Shown: in pieces, positions 4,986 through 20,969 of the stretch
Layout: each line of letters begins with the position of its first letter
How positions within the stretch are numbered: position 1 is the stretch's first letter
Source: Octopus sinensis
Taxonomy: Eukaryota
Assembly: GCF_006345805.1 (NCBI RefSeq)
Contig: NW_021836677.1
Coordinates: forward strand, 1-22,941
DNA: 22,941 bases
Direction: 5' to 3'
Position numbers and translations under genes: made by a program
The notes under the pieces: model-generated
The model's input: the letters and a program-made list of their open reading frames with translations, nothing else
The model's database searches: none
What the model was told of the DNA's origin: nothing

Positions 4986-5099
4986 AAAATGGGAAATGAA
5001 AGCCCCCCCCCGCCCTCCAGCACACCCATCCCACCCCCATAAACAAGGAGGAGAGCACCACAAGGCATCTTGTGTGATGCTCTAACGATTTTGCTAGTC

Positions 5100-5629
5100 C
5101 CCAAAACTACACACACACGCACACACACACACACACACCTATACACGTATACAGACATACATACATACATACACATAGCCCCATGCATTCACTTATGCAT
5201 ACATATATATATATATACACACACAAATGCCTACACATGCACACATGCACAGACACTCATGCTTTAATGCACACACATAAACATTGTTTACACACATATG
5301 CCTACACACGCGCACATATACACACTACGCGCGCGCACACACACACACACACACTTTGTGAATAAACAACGCCCGTGATGAGACAACGAAGGTTCCTCAA
5401 CGTGGTCAATCGACTTTTAAGAAATAGCAACCATATTTCCCTCAAATCACACTACTGTCTATATATAAAAAAAGGAAGAACTTCTTGGGGATAGTCATGG
5501 CTGGAACACTAATTACCTTAGGTTTGCTCAGTCATTGCCGACATGATCTAAATTACACACACACGCATACACACACACACACAACACACACACACACACA
5601 CACGGATATAAATACATACACAAATTTTC

Positions 5630-5662
<33 letters not shown>

Positions 5663-5960
5663 TACATACAACTGAACAGTACATGTATACGCACATATAT
5701 ACAGATACATTTACATACACTCAAAAATACACACACACACACACACACAACATACACGTGCCCATTTACACAAACTCCCCCACACACGCACACATATATT
5801 CACAGAGGCATGTATATACACACATACACAAATTCTCACACGACCGAATAGTACACACACACACACACACACACACAAAAGAAAACTGTAAACATACAGT
5901 CATACACACACTCACTCTAACATGTAAACATACACACATATTTACACACATGCACACATA
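5100..5960. repeat. CA/TACA-rich low-complexity region (interrupted by E1)
   Basis: Degenerate (CA)n/(CATA)n runs. Confidence 0.85.
5396..5555 (+). mobile_element. Repeat family E fragment (E1)
   Basis: Shares AGAAATAGCA.CCA and GTCATGGCTGGAAC motifs with copies at ~5990, 6190, 6850 and 8870. Confidence 0.6.
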
Positions 5961-5974
5961 GTCTGTTTGGTGAA

Positions 5975-6172
5975 CCTTAAGCAGTCTCTCCATTTGCTAG
6001 AAATAACACACAAATCTCCCTGATATCGCACTCCATTGGCTTAAAATTGGAAGGACGCGTTGGACAAATAGAAGTTCTAGTTACAGAATTCGACAAAATA
6101 GTCATAACTGGAAGGCTTTTGATCATAGTCCTGCTAGAGCATATCTGACCAGGGGCTAAAGAACAATAACAG
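5975..6172 (+). mobile_element. Repeat family E (E2), ending GACCAGGGGCTAAAGAACAATAAC
   Basis: GCTAGAAATAAC...GGAAGGACGCGTTGGA...GTCATAACTGGAA...GGGGCTAAA motifs are collinear with other E copies. Confidence 0.6.
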
Positions 6173-9076: not shown

Positions 9077-9303
9077 AAGCAGCGTTGTGGCAGAATCGGT
9101 AGAGCGCTGGGCAAGATGCTTAACGGAATTTCTCCCGGATCTTTATGTTCTGAGTTCAAATGCTGCTGTGGCCTACTTTGCTTTTCATCCTTTTAGGGTC
9201 AAGAAAATAAGTACCAGTTGAGAATTGGGGTCGATGTAATCGACTCAAAACTTTACCCACGAAATTTCAGTCAGGCTATGAGCCTGTAGTACAAAGAAAG
9301 ATT
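9077..9303 (+). mobile_element. tRNA-derived SINE family B (diverged)
   Basis: TGGCAGAATCGGTAG A-box-like, GAGTTCAAAT B-box-like, TTTCATCC...AAATAAGTACCAG core, GTCGATGTAATCGAC hairpin. Confidence 0.75.
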
Positions 9304-9319
9304 CAAGACGGGGATCTGA

Positions 9320-9591
9320 TAGAAATGTGAGCGGCAATTCTTCAGGCTTTGCATTCTGAGTTCAAATCCTGCCGAGGTCGACTTTGCCTTTCGTCCTTTC
9401 GGGATAAATTAAATAAGTACCAAAGTATAGGCGCAGATGTGGCAGTGTGGTAAGAAGCCTGCTTCCCAACCACATGGTTCCGAGTTCAGTCCTATTACAT
9501 TCCACCTAGGGCAAGTGTCTTCTACTATACCCTCGGGCCGACCAAGGACTTGTGAGTGGAATTGAGAGACGGAAACTGAAAGAAGTCCATC

Positions 9592-10161: not shown

Positions 10162-10503
10162 TAAGGGCGGGCGTTTAGCAGAATCGTTAGGACGCTGGGC
10201 GAAATGCGTAGCCGTATTTCGTCTGCCGTTACGTTCTGAGTTCAAATTCGGCCGAGGTCGACTTTGCCTTTCATCCTTTCGGGGGTCGATAAATAAAGAA
10301 CCAGTTACGCACTGGGGTCGATGTAATCGACTTAATCCCTTTGTCTGTCTTTGTTTGTCCCCACTATGTTTAGCCCCTTGTGGGCAATAAAGAAATAAGA
10401 ATCGTTAGGACGCTGGACAGAGGCCTTGTGGGGTTTTGCACCGGCTCTTTATATTTCTGAGTTCAAGTCACGCCGGGGTCAAGTTTGGTATAATAAAGTA
10501 CCA
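10162..10503 (+). mobile_element. SINE family B, full copy plus abutting partial copy
   Basis: Full copy 10162-10398; AGAATCGTTAGGACGCTGG is identical at 10180 and 10398, where the partial copy starts. Confidence 0.85.
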
Positions 10504-10630: not shown

Positions 10631-11073
10631 CTTGAAGGAGAGTAACAGAATCCTTGTTGTGTTGGCAGAAGTGCTTAATGGGTATATGTGTCGGTTCTCT
10701 ACATTCTGAGTTCAAATCCCACCCACCTGGAGAAGGTAGAACCTACATGAAGAAGGCAACAGGAAATCACACCACCATTCATCTCAAGTCTTGTCATGGT
10801 GGCCCAAAGTTGCAGTAATTTATTTAACAGCAGCAGGGAAGGTACAGGCCCTTCAAGATCGTATAGAGAGTGCTGGAGAAGGTTTACATGCACTGGATCT
10901 GCTATACTAAACCAGTGAAGTATAATTAAGTCGATTAAATCAACAAAACCCTTTCTCAAAATGCTAGCCTTTTGCTTAAATTGCGGACAATAATTAGCTC
11001 GTTCCGTCAGGTACATGTCCTAGTGGTCAGACTGCTCGCATGTATTCGCTTGTTTTTAATATTACAAGTTTAT

Positions 11074-11627
11074 ATGGCGGCGAGCTGGCAGAAATGTTAG
11101 CACGCCGGGCGAAATGCGTAGCCGTATTTCGTCTACCGTTACGTTCTGGGTTCAAATTCCGTCGAGATCGACATTGCCTTTCATCCTTTCGGGGTCGATA
11201 AATTAGGTACCAGTTACGCACTGGGCTCGATGTAATCGACTTAATCCGTCTGTCTGTAGTAAAGAAATAGGTAAGAAATAGGTATTTCGTCAGCCGCTAC
11301 GTTCTGAGTTCAAATTCCGTCGAGATCGACTTTGCCTTTCATCCTTTCGGGGTCGATTAAATAAGTACCACTGGGGTCGATATAATCGACTTAATCCGTT
11401 TGTCTGTTCTTGTTTGTCCTCTCTGTATTTAGCCCCTTGTGTGTAGTAAAGAAATAGAAATAGGTATTTCGTCTGCCGCTACGCTCTGAGTTCAAATTCC
11501 GCCGAGGTCGACCTTGCCTTTCATCATTTCGGGGTCGATAAATTAAATACGAATCATGTACTGCTGTCAATCTAGTCAACTGGTCTTCTCCCCAAAAATT
11601 TCGAACCTTGTGCCTAGAGTAGAAAAG
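11074..11627 (+). mobile_element. Head-to-tail trimer of SINE B plus terminal tail, inside one 16-bp TSD
   Basis: Units begin at 11076, 11282 and 11464; AATATTACAAGTTTAT occurs at 11058-11073 and 11628-11643. Confidence 0.88.
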
Positions 11628-12195: not shown

Positions 12196-12356
12196 TACCT
12201 TTTATCTTCGCAGCCATTAAAATGAAGCCATGCTGGGGCACCATCCCGGAGAATTTTTAGCACTCTTTTTTTTAGCCAAACCACTAAGTTACGGGGATGT
12301 AAACACAACACCAGTTGTCAAGCGGTAAGCGGCACAAACATAGACACACACACACG

Positions 12357-12360
<4 letters not shown>
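12196..12360 (-). mobile_element. SINE family A-like 3' fragment with internal deletion
   Basis: GCCATGCTGGGGCACC...CTAAGTTACGGGGATGTAAACAC...GTTGTCAAGCG. Confidence 0.7.
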
Positions 12361-12388
<28 letters not shown>

Positions 12389-12395
12389 ATGCCAT

Positions 12396-12584
12396 GATAG
12401 ATCGTTAGCCACTACACACATTTTTTCTCTCTTTGTTTCTCTCCTTGTTTTTTCTGTGTCCCTTGCTGTAGAAGAGCGTAGGCTCGAAACGTAAAATATT
12501 TTTTCTATTCCTGAGCTTTATACTAATACATCTGTTTGTTTTGTACACCACCTGTCTTCATCTTTTGTGTTTTTCCTAAACTCT

Positions 12585-12588
<4 letters not shown>
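12396..12588 (+). mobile_element. Repeat family G copy 1 (possible Penelope-like-derived element)
   Basis: Collinear with 15235-15404 and 14365-14520; core GAAGAGCGTAGGCTCGAAACGT; ends in (TA)n. Confidence 0.75.
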
Positions 12589-12629
<41 letters not shown>

Positions 12630-12764
12630 TAAAAAATGGAGTTAACGCAGGTGTAATCAAATATTTTTACTTTCGATACATGTTTCGAAAATTCCACTGA
12701 TACTATTCAAAAGAATAAATGGTATAAACAATGCAATCTTCTCGGTTTACGATATGGGAGGTAA

Positions 12765-12842
12765 GAGTTTTGGTCAGCCCGAGATTATAGTGGAAGTCAC
12801 TTACCGGAGGTGCCATGCGGTGAAGCAGAACCCGAAACCGTT
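12765..12842 (-). mobile_element. SINE family A head fragment
   Basis: TTTGGTCAGCCCGAG..TATAG.GGAAG.CACTT...GGTGCCA.GCG...GAACCCG. Confidence 0.55.
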
Positions 12843-13145
12843 TTTTGTGTTAATTTTTAAAATTTTGATTAATATTTTTATTTAATCCCTCTCGTTATAC
12901 ATCTGTGAACAATATCCTTCAATCGTTGATCTCAATGGCATTAAATGGATTTTATTTACAAACAGCTGTATCTGGTCTTAACATTTGTTTCGCACACATA
13001 GCTTGTGCAATTTATGATTGATCTGGAAACGTCTCCCTCTTAGAGAAAGCAAATGATTTTTTTTTTCAAATATTGTGTTACACCAATATTGGATAGATTA
13101 TTGGTAACATAGAGCATTTCTTTTCCTCTTTCCCTTGTATTTTAG

Positions 13146-13168
13146 GGCGATTTCTCATAGATGAATTG
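13146..13168 (+). CDS. Candidate 23-nt coding microexon (xRFLIDEL), product unknown
   Basis: Long pyrimidine tract ending TTTAG (13145) and donor-like TTG|GTGAAT; one open frame, ending in phase 0. Confidence 0.3.
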
Positions 13169-13577
13169 GTGAATTTACACACGTTATATTGAAAAATATC
13201 AGCTGTAGTCAGCAAGCGCAGAAAGAACAGAAGGCTATCATATAATATGCCATCATTCTGAAGTTCATTAAATCCATTTCAGTCATATTTCTTTTCTAAT
13301 ATTCACGTTATATTTCTAAAGTATGTTTTTCCAAAACTATCGCGCAGATTTTCACGCAAACACAGATTACTCAACATCATAATTCATTGCTATGTAGACT
13401 GATAGCCGATACAGAATGGCGAGCTTACTGGGAATAGCCGTATGATTCTTTGAATCTTTATATTATGCAACGAGGTAGGATCGTTTTATCAGTCTTACGA
13501 ATGTGTGTATGTATGTATGTATGTATGTACGTATGTATGTATGGATGGATGTATGTATGTATGTATGTATACATGTA

Positions 13578-13992
13578 TACTCTTTTTTTTACTCTTTTAC
13601 TTGTTTCAGTCATTTGACTGCGACCATGCTGGAGCACCGCCTTTAGTCGAGCAAATCGACCCCGGGACTTATTCTTTGTAAGCCCAGTACTTATTCTATC
13701 GGTCTTTTTTGCCGAACCGCTAAGTGACGAGGACGTAAACACACCAGCATCGGTTGTCAAGCAATGCTAGGGGGACAAACACAGACACACAAACACATAC
13801 ACACACACATATATATATATACATATATACGACAGGCTTCTTTCAGTTTCCGTTTACCAAATCCACTCACAAGGCATTGCTCAGCCCGGGGCTATAGCAG
13901 AAGACACTTGCCCAAGATGCCACGCAGTGGGACTGAACCCGGAACCATGTGGCTGGTTAGCATGCTACTTACCACACAGCCATTCCTGTGCC
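13578..13992 (-). mobile_element. SINE family A, full length (A12)
   Basis: Tail, GTCGAGCAAATCGAC hairpin, short microsatellite, head ending CATTCCTGTGCC. Confidence 0.92.
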
Positions 13993-14032
13993 TTCATATA
14001 TATACGTGTATGTATACACGTATATATATATG

Positions 14033-14340
14033 AAGGCGCATGCTCAGTGGTTAGAGCATCGGGATCACAATGATGAGGTAGTGAGTTCGATTCTCAATCA
14101 GGCTGTGTGTTGTCTTCCAGAACAAGACTCTTTATTTCACGTTATACTAGTTCATTCAGTTATAGAAATGAGTTATGACGTCACTGATGCCAAGCTGTAT
14201 CGGATTTTGCCTTTCCCATCGATAACATCGGTAGCGTGGAGAGAAGAGGCTGGCATACATGGATGAGTTCTGGTCTTCCATAAACAATCTTGCCTGAACT
14301 TGTACTACGGAGGGGAACATTCTTAGGTGCAGCCATGCTG
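14033..14340 (+). mobile_element. tRNA-derived SINE family F
   Basis: GGCGCATGCTCAGTGGTTAGAGC A-box, GAGTTCGATTC B-box, followed by a CORE-like GTTGTCTTCCAGAACAAGACTCTTTATTTCAC segment; 3' limit approximate. Confidence 0.65.
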
Positions 14341-14364
14341 GACCGCTCAAATTGACATTTTTTT

Positions 14365-14520
14365 TTTATTCTGTCTGTTTATTTCCTTTATATCTTTCTG
14401 CTGAAGAGCGCAGGCTCGAAACGTAAAAGACTTTTTCATTTTTCCCGAGCGTCAAATTAATACACTGGCGTGTTGTTCATACACCTGTCTTTGTCTTTTG
14501 TTTTTCTATAAATTTCAATT
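14365..14520 (+). mobile_element. Repeat family G copy 2
   Basis: CTGAAGAGCGCAGGCTCGAAACGTAAAAGAC core and downstream homology to G1 and G3. Confidence 0.7.
14393..14430 (+). ncRNA. Hammerhead-ribozyme-like motif (type I, minimal stem III), variant core
   Basis: Stem I UCUUU/AAAGA, core CUGCUGAA (contains CUGAAGA in a shifted register), stem II GAGC-GCAG-GCUC, GAAA, palindromic ACGU, putative GUA cleavage triplet. Activity untested. Confidence 0.5.
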
Positions 14521-14896
14521 ATATATGTGTGTATGTATGTATGTATACATGTATATCTCTCTCTATATATATATATATATGTGTGTGTGTGTGGGTGGGT
14601 GTGTGTATGTATATATGTAAATGTATACATAAAAATATATATGTATATATGTGTGTGTGTGTACGTGTGTATATATATATGCATATGAAATTTAATACGA
14701 GTTTGAACCAGCTGTTCCTTAAGTTTATGGGGGAGGGCAACCTGTAACGTATCGCGTTCGGCATCAAGAGAAGATGGTTAATGAGATAAGATTGTTCCAT
14801 CAGCCTCACGAAACTTTAAGTTTTACTTGAAGCTGAGTCAAACCGTTATCAAAAACTATATATATACATACATGTATGTATGTATGTATATATATA

Positions 14897-15200
14897 TCAC
14901 GTGATCACGTGACCGACCAGACCATCAGATGTTGTTACACATCGCTGGTCACAATGCGTTCGCATTGTTTTAGCCTTCGAATGACGCCACCGCGCTGGCT
15001 AAGCGAGCAGGCCAACAAAAGAAAGAGTGGGAGAAAGAGTGGTGAAAGAGTACAGCAGGGATCACCACCCCCTGCCGGAGCGTCATGGAGCTTTTAGGTG
15101 TTTTCGCTCAATAAACACTCACAATGACCGGTATGGGAATCGAAACCGCGATCCTGCGACCGCGTGTCCGCTGCCCTAACCACTGGGCCATTGCGCCTCC
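14897..15200 (-). mobile_element. SINE family C, tail variant 1 (C1)
   Basis: On the - strand: GGAGGCGCAATGGCCCAGTGGTTAGGGC A-box and GGTTTCGATTCC B-box; shared body; 3' end with ACAATGCG-TT-CGCATTGT hairpin. Confidence 0.85.
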
Positions 15201-15203
15201 ATA

Positions 15204-15234
<31 letters not shown>

Positions 15235-15404
15235 GATACATCGTTGGCCACTACACACATTTTTTCTCTCCTGTTTTTTTCTGTGTTCCTTTCTGTAGAA
15301 GAGCGTAGGCTCGAAACGTTAAAGACTTTTTCTATTCCTGAGCGTTATACTAATACATCTGTTTGTTTTGTACACCACCTGTCTTCGTCTTTTGTTTTCT
15401 CCCT
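15235..15404 (+). mobile_element. Repeat family G copy 3
   Basis: High similarity to G1; motif CTTT-CTGTAGAA-GAGCGTAGGCTC-GAAACGTT-AAAG at 15289-15324. Confidence 0.75.
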
Positions 15405-15895
15405 ATGTATATATATATATATAAGAGGATTTAAATCAAAAAGCAATTTCGTTAAAGCGAAGAAGAAAAATAAAAAAAGGACTCCAGCTGGAATTGTTCG
15501 GGTGACACCAAGGCGAAAGGAGGAATAAACTGAAAGGTATAATGAATAAACGTTCCAATCGGTCAAAACAACTTTATAATATTCCCAAATTATCATAAAT
15601 CGAATATAAATATATATTGAAACATCAGAGCACCCAATGGTAAAACCCGACAGTATAAAATATTCACATGTACAGGAATAAAAGGTGATAAAATCTAATA
15701 CATACATACATATATGTGTGTGTGTGTGTGTGTTGTGTGTGTGCGTGTGTGTATGCATGTATGTATGTACCTATATGTATATATAGATATATACATATAT
15801 AAGTATATATATGTACATATATATATTACACATCGTTGTTATTATGTTAAACTATCGTATGTCCAAATTTGACCAAATGCGTTTATTTATTTATA

Positions 15896-16338: not shown

Positions 16339-16699
16339 TCATCATCATCGGTAACCACTGAGCCGCAGGTTTTATGTCGGAGTTATCCCAGTTACCTGAG
16401 TTATCTTCTCCTAGAAGGATGCCCTAACAAAGGCTAGGAGTCCTTCACTCCCAATGGTTTAACCTCGCGATCGGGTATTCAGTCCGATTATTTCTATGTC
16501 CCCATGCATGATACACCCTTAAGATATTTATTGGATGGCCGTTGACTCTCAAGAGTTCCTCCACTTTTTGACAGGTTTTGTTTTTCATCCCGCAGGGTGT
16601 CCAATAAACACCCTCCTCACCAAGCAATCTTGGTGGGGTTGCCAGTTTAGTCGCCGACAACAAGACCATGCAACAGGTTGTATTAGGTTATATGTTACC
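16339..16699 (-). mobile_element. Non-coding RTE-like retroelement derivative with (GAT)n tail
   Basis: The - strand reads ...ACTAAACTGGCAACCCC...TAGGGCATCCTTCTAGGAGAAG.TAACTC... ending GATGATGATGA; resemblance to RTE-clade UTRs is from recall, not a database match. Confidence 0.4.
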
Positions 16700-17735: not shown

Positions 17736-18115
17736 GTGGCGTTCCTTCGGTTACGACGACGATGGTTCCAGTTAATCCGATAAACGGAACAGACTGCTCG
17801 TGAAATTAACGTGCAAGTGGATGAGAACTCCACAGACATATCTACCACTAGCGTAGTTCTCGGGGAGATTCACCATGACACAGAGTGTGACAAGGCCGGC
17901 CCTTTGAAATACAGGTACAACAGAAACACGACGAAAAAGTGAGAGAAAGTTGTGGTGAAAGCGTACAGCAGGGTCTCCACCATGCCCTTGCCGGAGCCTT
18001 GTGGAGCTTTAAGTGTTTTTGCTCAATAAACACTCACAACGCCCGGTCTGGGAATCGAAACCGCGATCCTACGACCTCGACTCTGCTGCCCGAAACACTG
18101 GGCCATTGCACCTCC
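17736..18115 (-). mobile_element. SINE family C, tail variant 2 (C2)
   Basis: Head and body homologous to C1 (TTTAAGTGTTTTTGCTCAATAAACACTCACAA...GGGAATCGAAACCGCGATCCT); ~17736-17935 is unrelated to the C1 and C3 tails. Confidence 0.85.
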
Positions 18116-18705: not shown

Positions 18706-18740
18706 TGTTTGTTTAGGGTTAGGGTTGGGGTTATGTCATT

Positions 18741-19052
18741 AAGGCAGCGAGCTAACAGAATTGTTAGCACGAAGGGCAAAATGCGTAGCGACATTTCGTC
18801 CGTCTTCACGGACTGACTTAAAATTCCGCAGAGGTCAACTTTGCCTTTCAACCTTTTGGGGTCGATAAATTAAGTATCAGTCAATTTATCCGAAATGGTT
18901 GTCCTTGTGCCAAAATTTGAAATCTTTTTTTTTTTTTACATTTAATTTGTAGGCAGTGAGTTGGCAGAATTGTTAGAACGCCGGAAAAAAGCTTACTAGC
19001 ATTTGATCGGTCTTTACCTTGAAACCTTTCGGGTCGATAAATTAAGTATTAG
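18741..19052 (+). mobile_element. Two SINE family B copies (18741-18924; internally deleted 18950-19052)
   Basis: AAGGCAGCGAGCTAACAGAATTGTTAG heads and GGGTCGATAAATTAAGTA cores. Confidence 0.75.
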
Positions 19053-19156: not shown

Positions 19157-19455
19157 TTATTTATTTATGCGCCCTTTTCAAGACTAGCCAGACTCATGGG
19201 CCCGGTTTCCCGGTTTCTGTGGCGTATGTGTTCTCCCCAGCTGGACGGGACGCCAGTCCATCGCAGCGTTACTCAAGTAACAGGAAGAGGGGATGAGAGA
19301 AAGTTGGGGCGAAAGAGTACAACAGGGGTCGCCACCTCGCCCTGACGGAGCCACGTGCAGATTTAGGTGTTTTCGCTCAATAAACACACACAACACCGAG
19401 TCTGGGAATCGAAACTGCGAGTCCGCTGCCCTAACCACTGGGCCATTGCGCCTCC
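19157..19455 (-). mobile_element. SINE family C, tail variant 3 (C3), with 14-bp TSD
   Basis: TSD AACATTTTTCGCCT at 19143-19156 and 19456-19469; (TAAA)n tail; 14-nt deletion in the head relative to C1. Confidence 0.9.
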
Positions 19456-19990: not shown

Positions 19991-20273
19991 ATACAAAAAT
20001 TGGGACAAGAACACAGAACATCCAGGCAGATGATACAAAAAGGGGACAAGAAAAAATAAGGATGGGTCATTCGGAGTTTTCTTTCGTCATTCGAGTTCCA
20101 GATTATCTTTGCAATTTTGACTGGTTATACTTGAGATAGCTCCAATTTGTACACATGTATGTATTATGTGTGTGTATGTATGCGTCCATGCATGCATGTA
20201 TGTATGTGTATATGTATGTATGTATACATGCATGTATGTATGTATGTATGCGTGAATGCATCTATGTATTATG
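19991..20273 (+). repeat. Left arm of long inverted repeat (repeat D fragment plus microsatellite flank)
   Basis: 20017-20152 matches the reverse complement of 20814-20949 at 130 of 136 positions. Confidence 0.9.
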
Positions 20274-20359: not shown

Positions 20360-20465
20360 GTTTTCAAATTTTGGCAGAGAGCCAGCAATTTCGAGAAACT
20401 GGTACTTATTTTATCGACTCCGAAAGGATGAAAAGCAAAATCGACCTCGGCAGAATTTGAACTCA
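20360..20465 (-). mobile_element. SINE family B fragment inside the inverted-repeat spacer
   Basis: CTGGTACTTATTTTATCGAC.CCGAAAGGATGAAAAGCAAAATCGACCTCGGCAGAATTTGAACTC. Confidence 0.8.
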
Positions 20466-20696: not shown

Positions 20697-20969
20697 CATA
20701 ATACATAGATGCATTCACACATACATACATGCATACATACATGTATACATATATGCGTACATACATATACACATGCATGGATGCATATATACACACACAT
20801 ATTACATACATACGTACAAATTGGAGCTATCTCGAGTATAACCAGTCGAAATTGCAAAGATAATCTGGAACTCGAATGACGAAAGAAAACTCCGAATGAC
20901 CCGTCCTTGTTTTTTCTTATCCCCTTTTTGTATCGTCTGCCTGGATGTTTTGCTGTCCCTTTTTTGTAT
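20697..20969 (-). repeat. Right arm of long inverted repeat
   Basis: Inner end CATAATACATAGATGCATTCAC (20697-20718) is the exact reverse complement of 20252-20273. Confidence 0.9.

What the first reader, a model, noticed from the sequence alone, without database searches (positions are those of the whole stretch)
12460..15326. Repeat family G carries a hammerhead-ribozyme-like fold with a non-canonical core (three copies, all + strand)
Seen: three copies (12461-12498, 14393-14430, 15289-15324) read [stem I]-CUG(UA/CU)GAA-GAGC-G(U/C)AG-GCUC-GAAA-CGU-(A/U)-[stem I']. Stem II is intact in all three, and changes fall in its loop and at the cleavage position, which is A or U and never G (NUH rule). 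Stem I is 5 bp in copy 2, 4 bp in copy 3 and degraded in copy 1. Known: Penelope-like elements carry minimal type I hammerheads whose tiny palindromic stem III (here ACGU) is proposed to work as a dimer. Unusual: the core is 8 nt rather than CUGANGA; copy 2 also has canonical CUGAAGA in a shifted register. Inference: a non-autonomous Penelope-like or retrozyme-type family with a variant ribozyme, co-oriented with the candidate host pre-mRNA and clustered closely enough for dimer formation.
Basis: partly seen in the sequence, partly recalled or inferred. Interest (0 to 1): 0.75.

Follow-up and report, generated by a model that had tools for sequence, protein, structure and literature searches.

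The report
Degenerate Penelope-type hammerhead in short repeat
Three copies of a ~180-base repeat carry the minimal hammerhead-ribozyme motif typical of Penelope-like retrotransposons, but with one essential core base changed, so they are most likely dead-on-arrival offspring of such an element, not working ribozymes.

Summary
Three + strand copies of one repeat (12388-12587, 14329-14507, 15232-15403) share the exact block GAAGAGCGYAGGCTCGAAACGT.

The "8-nt core" is the normal 7-nt CUGANGA box plus the 1-nt bulge that every real Penelope-like-element (PLE) hammerhead I fetched also has. The only core deviation is position 6, which is U, C, U instead of A.

A covariance model built only from PLE hammerheads of nine elements from other animals ranks the three copies first, second and third in the window. 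They score 22, 16.9 and 10.2 bits, with E about 6e-4, 0.013 and 0.8. Held-out real PLE hammerheads score 30-35 bits.

The copies are discrete single units in TA-rich microsatellites. They are not tandem, and no RT/GIY-YIG ORF was found in the window. Three copies give no covariation, and their folds are no more stable than shuffled sequence. Rfam finds no hammerhead.

A6 changes cripple cleavage in Mg2+. The A6C core CUGCUGA, identical to copy 2, is reported to keep Mn2+-dependent activity.

Best reading (about 0.6): monomer copies of a PLE-dependent, retrozyme-like element carrying an impaired hammerhead. No further copies could be retrieved, so the family consensus is untested.

The parts
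12388..12587 (+). Repeat G, copy 1 (whole unit, about 192-200 nt)
   Evidence: nhmmer and BLAST extents and the alignment. It sits between (TG)n at 12363-12388 and (TA)n at 12588-12626, inside the internal microsatellite of another SINE.
12466..12493 (+). Hammerhead-like motif of copy 1: CUGUAGA (C3-A9, U at position 6), bulged A, helix II GAGC/GUAG/GCUC, GAAA, CG, U16.1, A17. Stem I is degraded.
   Evidence: Descriptor hit with 1 core mismatch. PLE-hammerhead model R1 gives 10.2 bits, E 0.81.
14329..14507 (+). Repeat G, copy 2 (whole unit, about 179 nt). It is the most diverged copy, 73-80% identical to the others.
   Evidence: Its 5' end directly abuts a tRNA-like SINE at 14036-14328.
14398..14425 (+). 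Hammerhead-like motif of copy 2: CUGCUGA (C at position 6), bulged A, GAGC/GCAG/GCUC, GAAA, CG, U, A17. Stem I is 5 bp (14393-14397 with 14426-14430).
   Evidence: R1 gives 16.9 bits, E 0.013. The core string equals the published A6C mutant core CUGCUGA.
15232..15403 (+). Repeat G, copy 3 (whole unit, about 172-175 nt)
   Evidence: It has (TATG)n at 15202-15234 upstream and TATG(TA)n downstream.
15293..15320 (+). Hammerhead-like motif of copy 3: CUGUAGA, bulged A, GAGC/GUAG/GCUC, GAAA, CG, U, U17. Stem I is 4 bp (15289-15292 with 15321-15324).
   Evidence: R1 gives 22.0 bits, E 5.7e-4.
12549..12568 (+). Second conserved block of the unit, CACCTGTCTT(YR)TCTTTTGT, near the 3' end. It also occurs at 14482-14501 and 15376-15395.
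   Evidence: It is as conserved as the hammerhead block in sliding 22-column windows between copies 2 and 3. Its function is unknown. A role as a site for reverse-transcription initiation is only a guess.
12588..12626 (.). (TA)n at the 3' end of copy 1. Equivalent TA-rich microsatellites follow copy 2 (14520-14686) and copy 3 (15404-15424).
   Evidence: TRF and the sequence.
14036..14328 (+). tRNA-like SINE abutting copy 2. Whether it belongs to the element is uncertain.
   Evidence: A-box-like and B-box-like strings are visible. It is unique in the window and ARAGORN is negative.

Best explanation
Repeat G is a short (about 175-200 nt) non-autonomous retroelement unit derived from the hammerhead-bearing terminal region (pLTR) of a Penelope-like element (PLE). 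It is the same kind of sequence as a monomer of an animal non-LTR retrozyme.

Inferred: its RNA (+ strand) was copied by a PLE reverse transcriptase/GIY-YIG endonuclease supplied in trans and inserted into TA-rich microsatellites.

Shown: the unit carries a PLE-type minimal type I hammerhead. This consists of the CUGANGA box, a 1-nt bulge, helix II closed by G10.1-C11.1, GAAA, the palindromic ACGU that stands in for helix III, and a non-G cleavage base.

Shown: position 6 is a pyrimidine in all three copies. Inferred from published mutational work: these copies cleave very poorly or not at all in Mg2+. As isolated monomers they also lack the second hammerhead that this type needs to form helix III.

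Inferred: the three copies are inert offspring. The motif probably persisted in the master copy either because it was recently functional or because propagation does not need cleavage.
For: 1. Architecture. Every PLE-specific feature listed by Cervera & de la Pena 2014 is present except A6.

2. Positive controls with the same descriptor. The experimentally validated Anolis Poseidon hammerhead is recovered at its tandem junction as CUGAGGA + U + helix II + GAAACGUC. Ten further hammerheads sit next to real PLE ORFs from a weevil, a mealworm, a spider, a lamprey, a lizard, a cockroach, a damselfly and two metagenome contigs. All have a 1-nt bulge and GAAACGU(C/U). These real hammerheads covary strongly: 9 of 10 pairs show compensatory changes.

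3. Independent model. Covariance model R1 was built from 9 of those sequences and contains nothing from this window. It ranks the G copies 1st to 3rd in the window in the predicted register, at 22.0, 16.9 and 10.2 bits. The next hit scores 8.4 bits.

4. Chance. The descriptor null gives about 3e-3 hits per window.

5. Anatomy of a retroposed unit:
   - The 5' ends of the three copies lie within about 5 nt of each other, and the 3' ends are common.
   - TA-rich microsatellite lies at all three 3' ends. PLE endonucleases prefer AT-rich or (TA)n DNA, and the lizard PLE in L006 also ends in (TA)n.
   - The unit ends 82-94 nt after the putative cut. Six real PLE insertions measured here end 53-94 nt after it, and in Anolis Poseidon reverse transcription starts 82-89 nt after it.

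6. Size and state fit published non-LTR retrozyme families, whose consensus is 51-972 bp and which leave dispersed monomer derivatives.

7. Hammerhead catalytic mutants do not impair PLE insertion in vitro. A family can therefore spread with a defective core.
Against: - G scores below the held-out real PLE hammerheads: 10-22 bits against 30-35.
- Helix II is 4 bp with a 4-nt loop, against 6-7 bp in the real ones.
- Rfam finds no hammerhead, even at E<=10 on 76-nt pieces. Whether the Rfam models detect helix-III-less hammerheads could not be checked.
- Three copies give zero covariation.
- Folding energies are no better than shuffles, with z of -0.27, -0.49 and +0.55.
- Stem I is a U-tract paired with AAAG, which is easy to get by chance.
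- No PLE ORF is in the window.
- The + strand is 43% T and 19% A, unlike the A/C-rich sense strand around most real PLE hammerheads. There is no recognisable similarity downstream of the cut.
- Microsatellite flanks are common to other repeats in this window, so they are not specific.
- About 340 one-mismatch motifs per genome are expected by chance.
- No copies from elsewhere could be obtained.
Confidence: 0.6

Rival explanations
1. Chance resemblance. G is an unrelated short retroposon (a SINE, or the tail of a LINE), on either strand. Its conserved GAGC-GYAG-GCUC hairpin is, at most, a recognition element for a partner reverse transcriptase. The flanking CUG..GA and GAAACGU strings mimic a hammerhead by accident.
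For: - About 340 one-mismatch hits per genome are expected by chance, so some repeat family could carry one.
- There is no covariation and no thermodynamic signal.
- Rfam is negative.
- The + strand is T-rich, unlike typical retroelement sense strands.
- The flanks show no similarity to real PLEs.
- A second block near the 3' end is equally conserved.
- Microsatellite flanks are generic in this window.
Against: - The match includes PLE-specific details that were not needed to call it hammerhead-like: the 1-nt bulge, the G10.1-C11.1 pair and the exact GAAACGU-H string.
- An independent PLE model places the copies 1st to 3rd in the window, with E about 6e-4 for the best copy.
- The 3' end lies at a PLE-like distance from the putative cut.
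Confidence: 0.27
2. One reading: a working variant ribozyme. The pyrimidine-6 core cleaves in vivo, alone or by pairing of neighbouring copies in one transcript.
For: - A natural A6C hammerhead (phage Bcep176) and an engineered CUGCUGA core cleave at about 0.2-0.3 per min with 0.3-1 mM Mn2+. Copy 2 has exactly CUGCUGA.
- All other core positions are intact in all three copies.
Against: - A6C lowers the rate in Mg2+ to 3.55e-6 per min at 0.3 mM in the mouse-gut ribozyme, against 0.3 per min for the native A6 form, and leaves only low activity in Bcep176.
- I found no data supporting an active U6 core (copies 1 and 3).
- Even canonical PLE min-hammerheads cleave poorly, and only as dimers or with an extended helix III.
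- The copies here are 895 and 1932 nt apart, and the ACGU duplex is worth only about -3.7 kcal/mol.
- Copy 1 has no stem I.
- In the context of the whole unit the hairpin is not part of the minimum-energy fold of any of the three copies.
Confidence: 0.08
3. A minus-strand tRNA-derived SINE. The reverse complement, GTTTCGAGCCT, would be a degenerate B box.
For: It matches 7 of the 9 specified B-box positions (GGTTCGANNCC; my reading). The minus strand is A-rich.
Against: - ARAGORN finds no tRNA-like structure in the window.
- I see no A-box-like string upstream on that strand.
- Only 2 of 3 copies have a microsatellite at the end that would then be the 3' end, against 3 of 3 for the + strand reading.
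Confidence: 0.05

Closest known systems
Minimal type I hammerheads in the pLTRs of Penelope-like elements (Cervera & de la Pena 2014; validated example: Poseidon_Ac of Anolis, Frangieh et al. 2024)
   Same: - CUG.NGA box, then one bulged nucleotide.
- Helix II closed by G10.1-C11.1.
- GAAA, then the palindromic A-CG-U with no helix III loop, then a non-G cleavage base.
- A short stem I.
- Location tens of nt upstream of the element's 3' end.
- An AT-rich target.
   Different: - Position 6 is U or C, not A.
- Helix II is 4 bp with a 4-nt loop, against 6-7 bp with 5-8 nt loops.
- H17 is A or U, against C or U.
- No RT/GIY-YIG ORF, no pLTR pair and no inverted partner copy lie nearby.
- The flanks are T-rich.
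- Model score is 10-22 bits, against 30-58.
Animal non-LTR retrozymes (Cervera & de la Pena 2020; Li, Clavereau & Pollet 2026 preprint)
   Same: - A short non-coding unit (here 175-200 nt; published families are 51-972 bp) with a type I hammerhead.
- Thought to depend on PLEs.
- Dispersed monomer derivatives are described.
   Different: The defining tandem arrangement, with at least two consecutive complete hammerheads, is absent here. The core is non-canonical. CircRNA formation is untested.
Natural A6C hammerhead of bacteriophage Bcep176, and the CUGCUGA mutant of a mouse-gut hammerhead (Perreault et al. 2011; Naghdi et al. 2020)
   Same: Cytosine at core position 6. Copy 2's box CUGCUGA is letter-for-letter the tested mutant core.
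   Different: Those are full ribozymes with a stable helix III and tertiary contacts. G is a helix-III-less minimal motif in a eukaryotic repeat. Two of the three copies have U6, which those papers did not test.

Membership tests
Hammerhead ribozyme (PLE-type minimal type I) | Catalytic box C3-U4-G5-A6-N7-G8-A9 | tested here: not met
   The boxes read CUGUAGA, CUGCUGA and CUGUAGA. A6 is U, C and U; the other five specified positions are intact.
Hammerhead ribozyme (PLE-type minimal type I) | G12-A13-A14 box, A15.1...U16.1, and a non-G base at position 17 | tested here: met
   GAAA-CG-U-A/A/U in all three copies.
Hammerhead ribozyme (PLE-type minimal type I) | Helix II closed by G10.1-C11.1 | tested here: met
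   GAGC/GCUC, 4 bp, 4-nt loop, identical in all copies. It is shorter than the 6-7 bp of real PLE examples.
Hammerhead ribozyme (PLE-type minimal type I) | One unpaired nucleotide between A9 and G10.1 | tested here: met
   An A in all three copies. 10 of 10 real PLE hammerheads and Poseidon_Ac have a 1-nt bulge.
Hammerhead ribozyme (PLE-type minimal type I) | Palindromic 15.2/16.2 (ACGU) replacing helix III | tested here: met
   CG in all copies, as in all real examples.
Hammerhead ribozyme (PLE-type minimal type I) | Helix I of about 3-6 bp flanking the motif | tested here: inconclusive
   0, 5 and 4 contiguous bp. It is a low-complexity pairing of CUUU(U) with AAAG(A).
Hammerhead ribozyme (PLE-type minimal type I) | Covariation supporting helices I and II | tested here: inconclusive
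   Zero covarying pairs among 3 copies. Helix II never varies, so this says nothing either way. The real PLE set covaries in 9 of 10 pairs.
Hammerhead ribozyme (PLE-type minimal type I) | Significant score against a model of the family | tested here: inconclusive
   My own model from 9 real PLE hammerheads gives 22.0, 16.9 and 10.2 bits (E about 6e-4, 0.013, 0.8; E-values are rough). These are the top 3 hits in the window but fall below held-out real members at 30-35 bits. The Rfam hammerhead families give no hit.
Hammerhead ribozyme (PLE-type minimal type I) | Site-specific self-cleavage | not testable with these tools
   Needs in vitro transcription and cleavage assays.
Penelope-like element (autonomous) | ORF with a telomerase-like RT and a GIY-YIG endonuclease | tested here: not met
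   tblastn with the Poseidon_Ac protein against the window gives a best E of 0.94. Pfam on the 10 longest non-repeat ORFs finds nothing. The longest ORFs are microsatellite-derived.
Penelope-like element (autonomous) | pLTR pair, partial tandem, or an inverted truncated partner copy | tested here: not met
   There is no inverted or tandem G partner in the window. Such partners are present in 6 of the 10 real loci.
Penelope-like element (non-autonomous derivative) | 3' end a fixed short distance after the hammerhead; AT-rich or (TA)n target | tested here: met
   The ends lie 82-94 nt after the putative cut, against 53-94 nt in six real loci and 82-89 nt in Poseidon_Ac. TA-rich microsatellite lies at 3 of 3 3' ends. 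Neither feature is specific.
Penelope-like element (non-autonomous derivative) | Sequence shared with the pLTR of a PLE in the same genome | not testable with these tools
   No genome of the source organism was reachable.
Non-LTR retrozyme | Tandem repeat with at least two consecutive units, each with a complete hammerhead | tested here: not met
   TRF finds only microsatellites in 12200-15600. The copies are 1932 and 895 nt apart with unrelated sequence between them.
Non-LTR retrozyme | Small circular RNA intermediates | not testable with these tools
   Needs RNA data.
tRNA-derived SINE | tRNA-like head with A and B boxes within the unit | tested here: not met
   ARAGORN finds nothing in the window, and I see no such head in units 1 and 3. 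Copy 2 abuts a tRNA-like SINE (14036-14328) whose relation to G is unresolved.

The most novel reading that the evidence does not exclude
The pyrimidine at core position 6 is ancestral to the family and kept by selection. In that case an animal retroelement lineage has been propagating with a C6/U6 hammerhead. The motif would be either a metal-biased (Mn2+-preferring) or very slow ribozyme, or a catalytically silent RNA scaffold that the PLE machinery still needs.

The parsimony argument from the three copies favours a pyrimidine-6 ancestor: U and C differ by one transition, whereas an A6 ancestor needs two independent transversions at the same site.
Probability: 0.12. Interest if true: 0.6.

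Novelty: new member of a known kind. Interest (0 to 1): 0.3.

Why it matters
If the reading is right, this is one more PLE- or retrozyme-derived hammerhead family, and in itself ordinary.

Its small value is as a natural example in which every core position but A6 has survived in copies that are 20-27% diverged. Published in vitro work shows that PLE insertion does not need hammerhead catalysis. Together these bear on the open question of what PLE hammerheads are for.

A genome-wide look at this family could show whether the core decays freely after insertion, or whether a position-6 variant is transmitted.

Tried and rejected
Attempts to get more copies or the source genome all failed:
- An exact-pattern scan of metagenome contigs gave one high-GC bacterial coding contig, which is a chance match.
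- Scans of viral contigs and of prokaryotic genomes gave 0 hits.
- A protein-database search with the ORF that runs through copy 3, and one with a peptide of the window's commonest SINE, gave nothing.
- Look-ups of two window ORFs found them not on record.
- A search with the Anolis PLE RT/EN gave 4603 hits. The 120 listed include no named cephalopod or other mollusc. I used them instead to fetch real PLE loci as controls.
- Supplements of three papers held no usable cephalopod or PLE-hammerhead sequences.

Readings I rejected:
- The shifted-register canonical core in copy 2, because helix II cannot form.
- An MBD-like exon at 16448-16687(-). Pfam gives E 0.063 and PDB gives nothing.
- The Rfam miRNA hits in the region, which are microsatellite artefacts.
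- Homology of G's flanks to real PLE flanks; none is visible.

MAFFT misaligned G with Poseidon_Ac because helix II differs in length, so I made the comparison by descriptor and by covariance model instead.

The window looks to me like cephalopod (octopus-type) SINE- and microsatellite-rich DNA. That is recollection only and I could not test it.
Full report
WHAT IS THERE

The window is dense in SINE-like repeats and TA/TG/TATG microsatellites. It has no long ORF apart from microsatellite-derived ones. Rfam gives no hit at gathering thresholds.

Family G is real. The 22-mer GAAGAGCGYAGGCTCGAAACGT occurs exactly three times, all on the + strand, against 0 expected. BLAST and an nhmmer profile find no other copy in the window.

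The repeated unit is larger than the finding states: 12388-12587, 14329-14507 and 15232-15403. Copies 1 and 3 are 86% identical. Copy 2 is 73-80% identical to them.

RE-READING THE MOTIF

I numbered the motif by the rules that Cervera & de la Pena (2014) give for the minimal hammerheads of Penelope-like elements (PLEs). Copy 3 then reads:
- stem I: CUUU
- core: C3-U4-G5-U6-A7-G8-A9
- one bulged A
- helix II: G10.1-AGC, loop GUAG, GCU-C11.1
- G12-A13-A14
- A15.1-C15.2-G16.2-U16.1
- U17
- stem I': AAAG

The real deviation is position 6: U in copies 1 and 3, and C in copy 2. The canonical string CUGAAGA in copy 2 (14401-14407) is incompatible with helix II, so I reject that register.

CONTROLS FROM REAL ELEMENTS

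The published Poseidon_Ac consensus of Anolis carries a hammerhead that has been shown to cleave. When its 3' end is joined to its 5' end, as in a tandem copy, it gives CUGAGGA-U-helix II-GAAACGUC. My descriptor finds it with no mismatch.

I used its RT/EN region to find PLE proteins and fetched ten loci from insects, a spider, a lamprey, a lizard and two metagenome contigs.
- Nine of the ten loci have a descriptor hit just downstream of the ORF. Six loci also have an inverted truncated copy upstream.
- Every descriptor hit (ten distinct sequences) has a 1-nt bulge, a 6-7 bp helix II, and GAAACGU followed by C or U. One, from Tenebrio, has the core variant CCGAAGA.
- The tenth locus, from Dendrolimus, has a degenerate core that only the covariance model caught.
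- Aligned, these hammerheads covary in 9 of 10 pairs.

INDEPENDENT TEST

I built covariance model R1 from nine of these sequences. I searched the window on both strands with filters off.
- The three G copies are the top three hits, in exactly the register above: 22.0 bits (E 5.7e-4), 16.9 bits (E 0.013) and 10.2 bits (E 0.81).
- The next hit scores 8.4 bits. E-values from this model are rough.
- Real PLE hammerheads left out of the model score 30.5-35.3 bits, and members of the model score 45-58 bits.

G is therefore well above background but clearly weaker than real members. It loses score on A6, the short helix II and stem I.

A separate null, 80 Mb of order-1 Markov sequence, gives about 3e-3 one-mismatch descriptor hits per window and about 340 per 2.7-Gb genome. 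The three copies are one evolutionary event. The motif alone is therefore suggestive, not conclusive.

ANATOMY OF THE UNIT

- All three copies begin within about 5 nt of the same point and share a 3' end. G is a discrete short unit, not a set of random 5' truncations of a long element.
- Each copy is followed by TA-rich microsatellite. Copies 1 and 3 have microsatellite on both sides, and copy 1 sits inside the internal microsatellite of another SINE.
- PLE endonucleases are reported to prefer AT-rich or (TA)n DNA, and the lizard PLE in L006 ends in (TA)n. Other repeats in this window also abut microsatellites, so this feature is weak evidence.
- The unit ends 82-94 nt after the putative cut. 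Six real insertions end 53-94 nt after it. In Poseidon_Ac reverse transcription starts 82-89 nt after it.
- There is no tandem array of the unit, no inverted partner and no PLE ORF in the window.
- The size and the monomeric, dispersed state match what a 2026 preprint describes as monomer derivatives of non-LTR retrozymes, which it relates to PLE pLTRs.

IS IT ACTIVE?

Probably not.
- A6 is a conserved core base. The natural A6C variant of phage Bcep176 has low activity. An engineered CUGCUGA core, the exact string of copy 2, drops to 3.55e-6 per min at 0.3 mM Mg2+, against 0.3 per min for the native form. It keeps about 0.18 per min with 0.3 mM Mn2+. I found nothing supporting an active U6 core.
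- Even canonical PLE minimal hammerheads cleave poorly, and only as dimers or with an extended helix III. Here the nearest partners are 895 and 1932 nt away, and the ACGU self-duplex is worth about -3.7 kcal/mol.
- Local folds are no more stable than shuffled sequence, with z of -0.27, -0.49 and +0.55. In the context of the whole unit the helix II hairpin is not part of the minimum-energy fold of any of the three copies.
- Copy 1 has lost stem I.

WHAT THE COPIES SAY ABOUT THE ANCESTOR (inference)

U6 and C6 differ by one transition, whereas an A6 ancestor needs two independent transversions at the same site. The last common ancestor of these copies therefore probably already had a pyrimidine at position 6.

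The hammerhead block is more conserved than the rest of the unit: 21 of 22 positions, against about 63% elsewhere (post hoc Fisher p about 1e-3). A block near the 3' end is equally conserved.

This fits a master copy that kept the motif while being catalytically impaired. It is compatible with the finding that hammerhead mutants do not affect PLE insertion in vitro.

WHAT SPEAKS AGAINST

- Three copies give no covariation.
- Rfam has no hammerhead hit. I could not check whether its models detect hammerheads that lack helix III.
- The + strand is T-rich, unlike the sense strand around most real PLE hammerheads.
- The flanks show no similarity to real PLEs.
- I could not reach the source genome by any route.
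- That the window is cephalopod DNA is my recollection only. The literature on PLE and SINE load in octopus is relevant only if that is true.

VERDICT

G most likely (about 0.6) consists of monomer copies of a PLE-dependent, retrozyme-like short element carrying an impaired PLE-type minimal hammerhead. I put a chance look-alike in an unrelated retroposon at about 0.27 and a working variant ribozyme at about 0.08.

It is a new member of a known kind and of modest interest. The position-6 question is the only unusual part, and a genome-wide census of the family would settle it directly.

Noticed in passing
window 14036-14328 (+): A tRNA-like SINE head (A-box-like TCAGTGGTTAGAGC, B-box-like GAGTTCGATTCTC) runs straight into the 5' end of G copy 2 with no microsatellite between them. 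It is unique in the window and ARAGORN is negative. It could be a composite SINE with a G-type 3' module, as in the hammerhead-bearing Sm-alpha SINE of Schistosoma, or it could be two adjacent insertions.
   Followed up: partly
window 14880-15195 (-); also 17933-18109, 19294-19450, 2-92: A tRNA-derived SINE family with four copies. The copy at 14880-15195 ends in the palindrome CACGTGATCACGTG followed by a TA/CATA microsatellite.
   Followed up: partly
window 20014-20265 and 20701-20952: A 252-nt inverted repeat, 87-91% complementary, with a 435-nt spacer. Its arms are partly TATG/CATG microsatellite. It could be a foldback structure or two inverted repeat copies.
   Followed up: no
window 9088-9422, 10178-10321, 11060-11230, 11282-11370, 11464-11563, 18740-18881, 20397-20465(-): A family of about 145 nt, clustered with 160-180-nt spacing around 11.0-11.6 kb. 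It looks like a short local array of a SINE-like unit.
   Followed up: no
window 12332-12388, 13509-13581, 14637-14683, 15730-15799: Sub-threshold Rfam hits to mir-297, mir-466 and mir-3149 fall on TG/TA/TATG microsatellites. They are artefacts of low complexity.
   Followed up: yes
window 5001-6000: A strong negative GC skew (-0.48), caused by CA-rich microsatellite tracts.
   Followed up: no
L002-L011 (real PLE loci from other animals): - A CCCG(A/G)AA box lies about 33-38 nt after the hammerhead cut in several loci and in Poseidon_Ac.
- A GGCCGTGAAAGCC-like extension (the PLE 'tail') is present in only one copy of each inverted pair.
- The Dendrolimus copy (L009 5212-5257) has a degenerate core, CCGUGAU, yet is duplicated in inverted orientation.
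   Followed up: partly
protein P0060: A PLE reverse transcriptase 62% identical to Anolis Poseidon is recorded as a partial hypothetical protein of Escherichia coli on a 2.6-kb contig. It is probably eukaryotic contamination of a bacterial assembly.
   Followed up: no
L001 341-362 (-): The only metagenome match to the G 22-mer lies in a high-GC bacterial coding contig. It is a chance match.
   Followed up: yes
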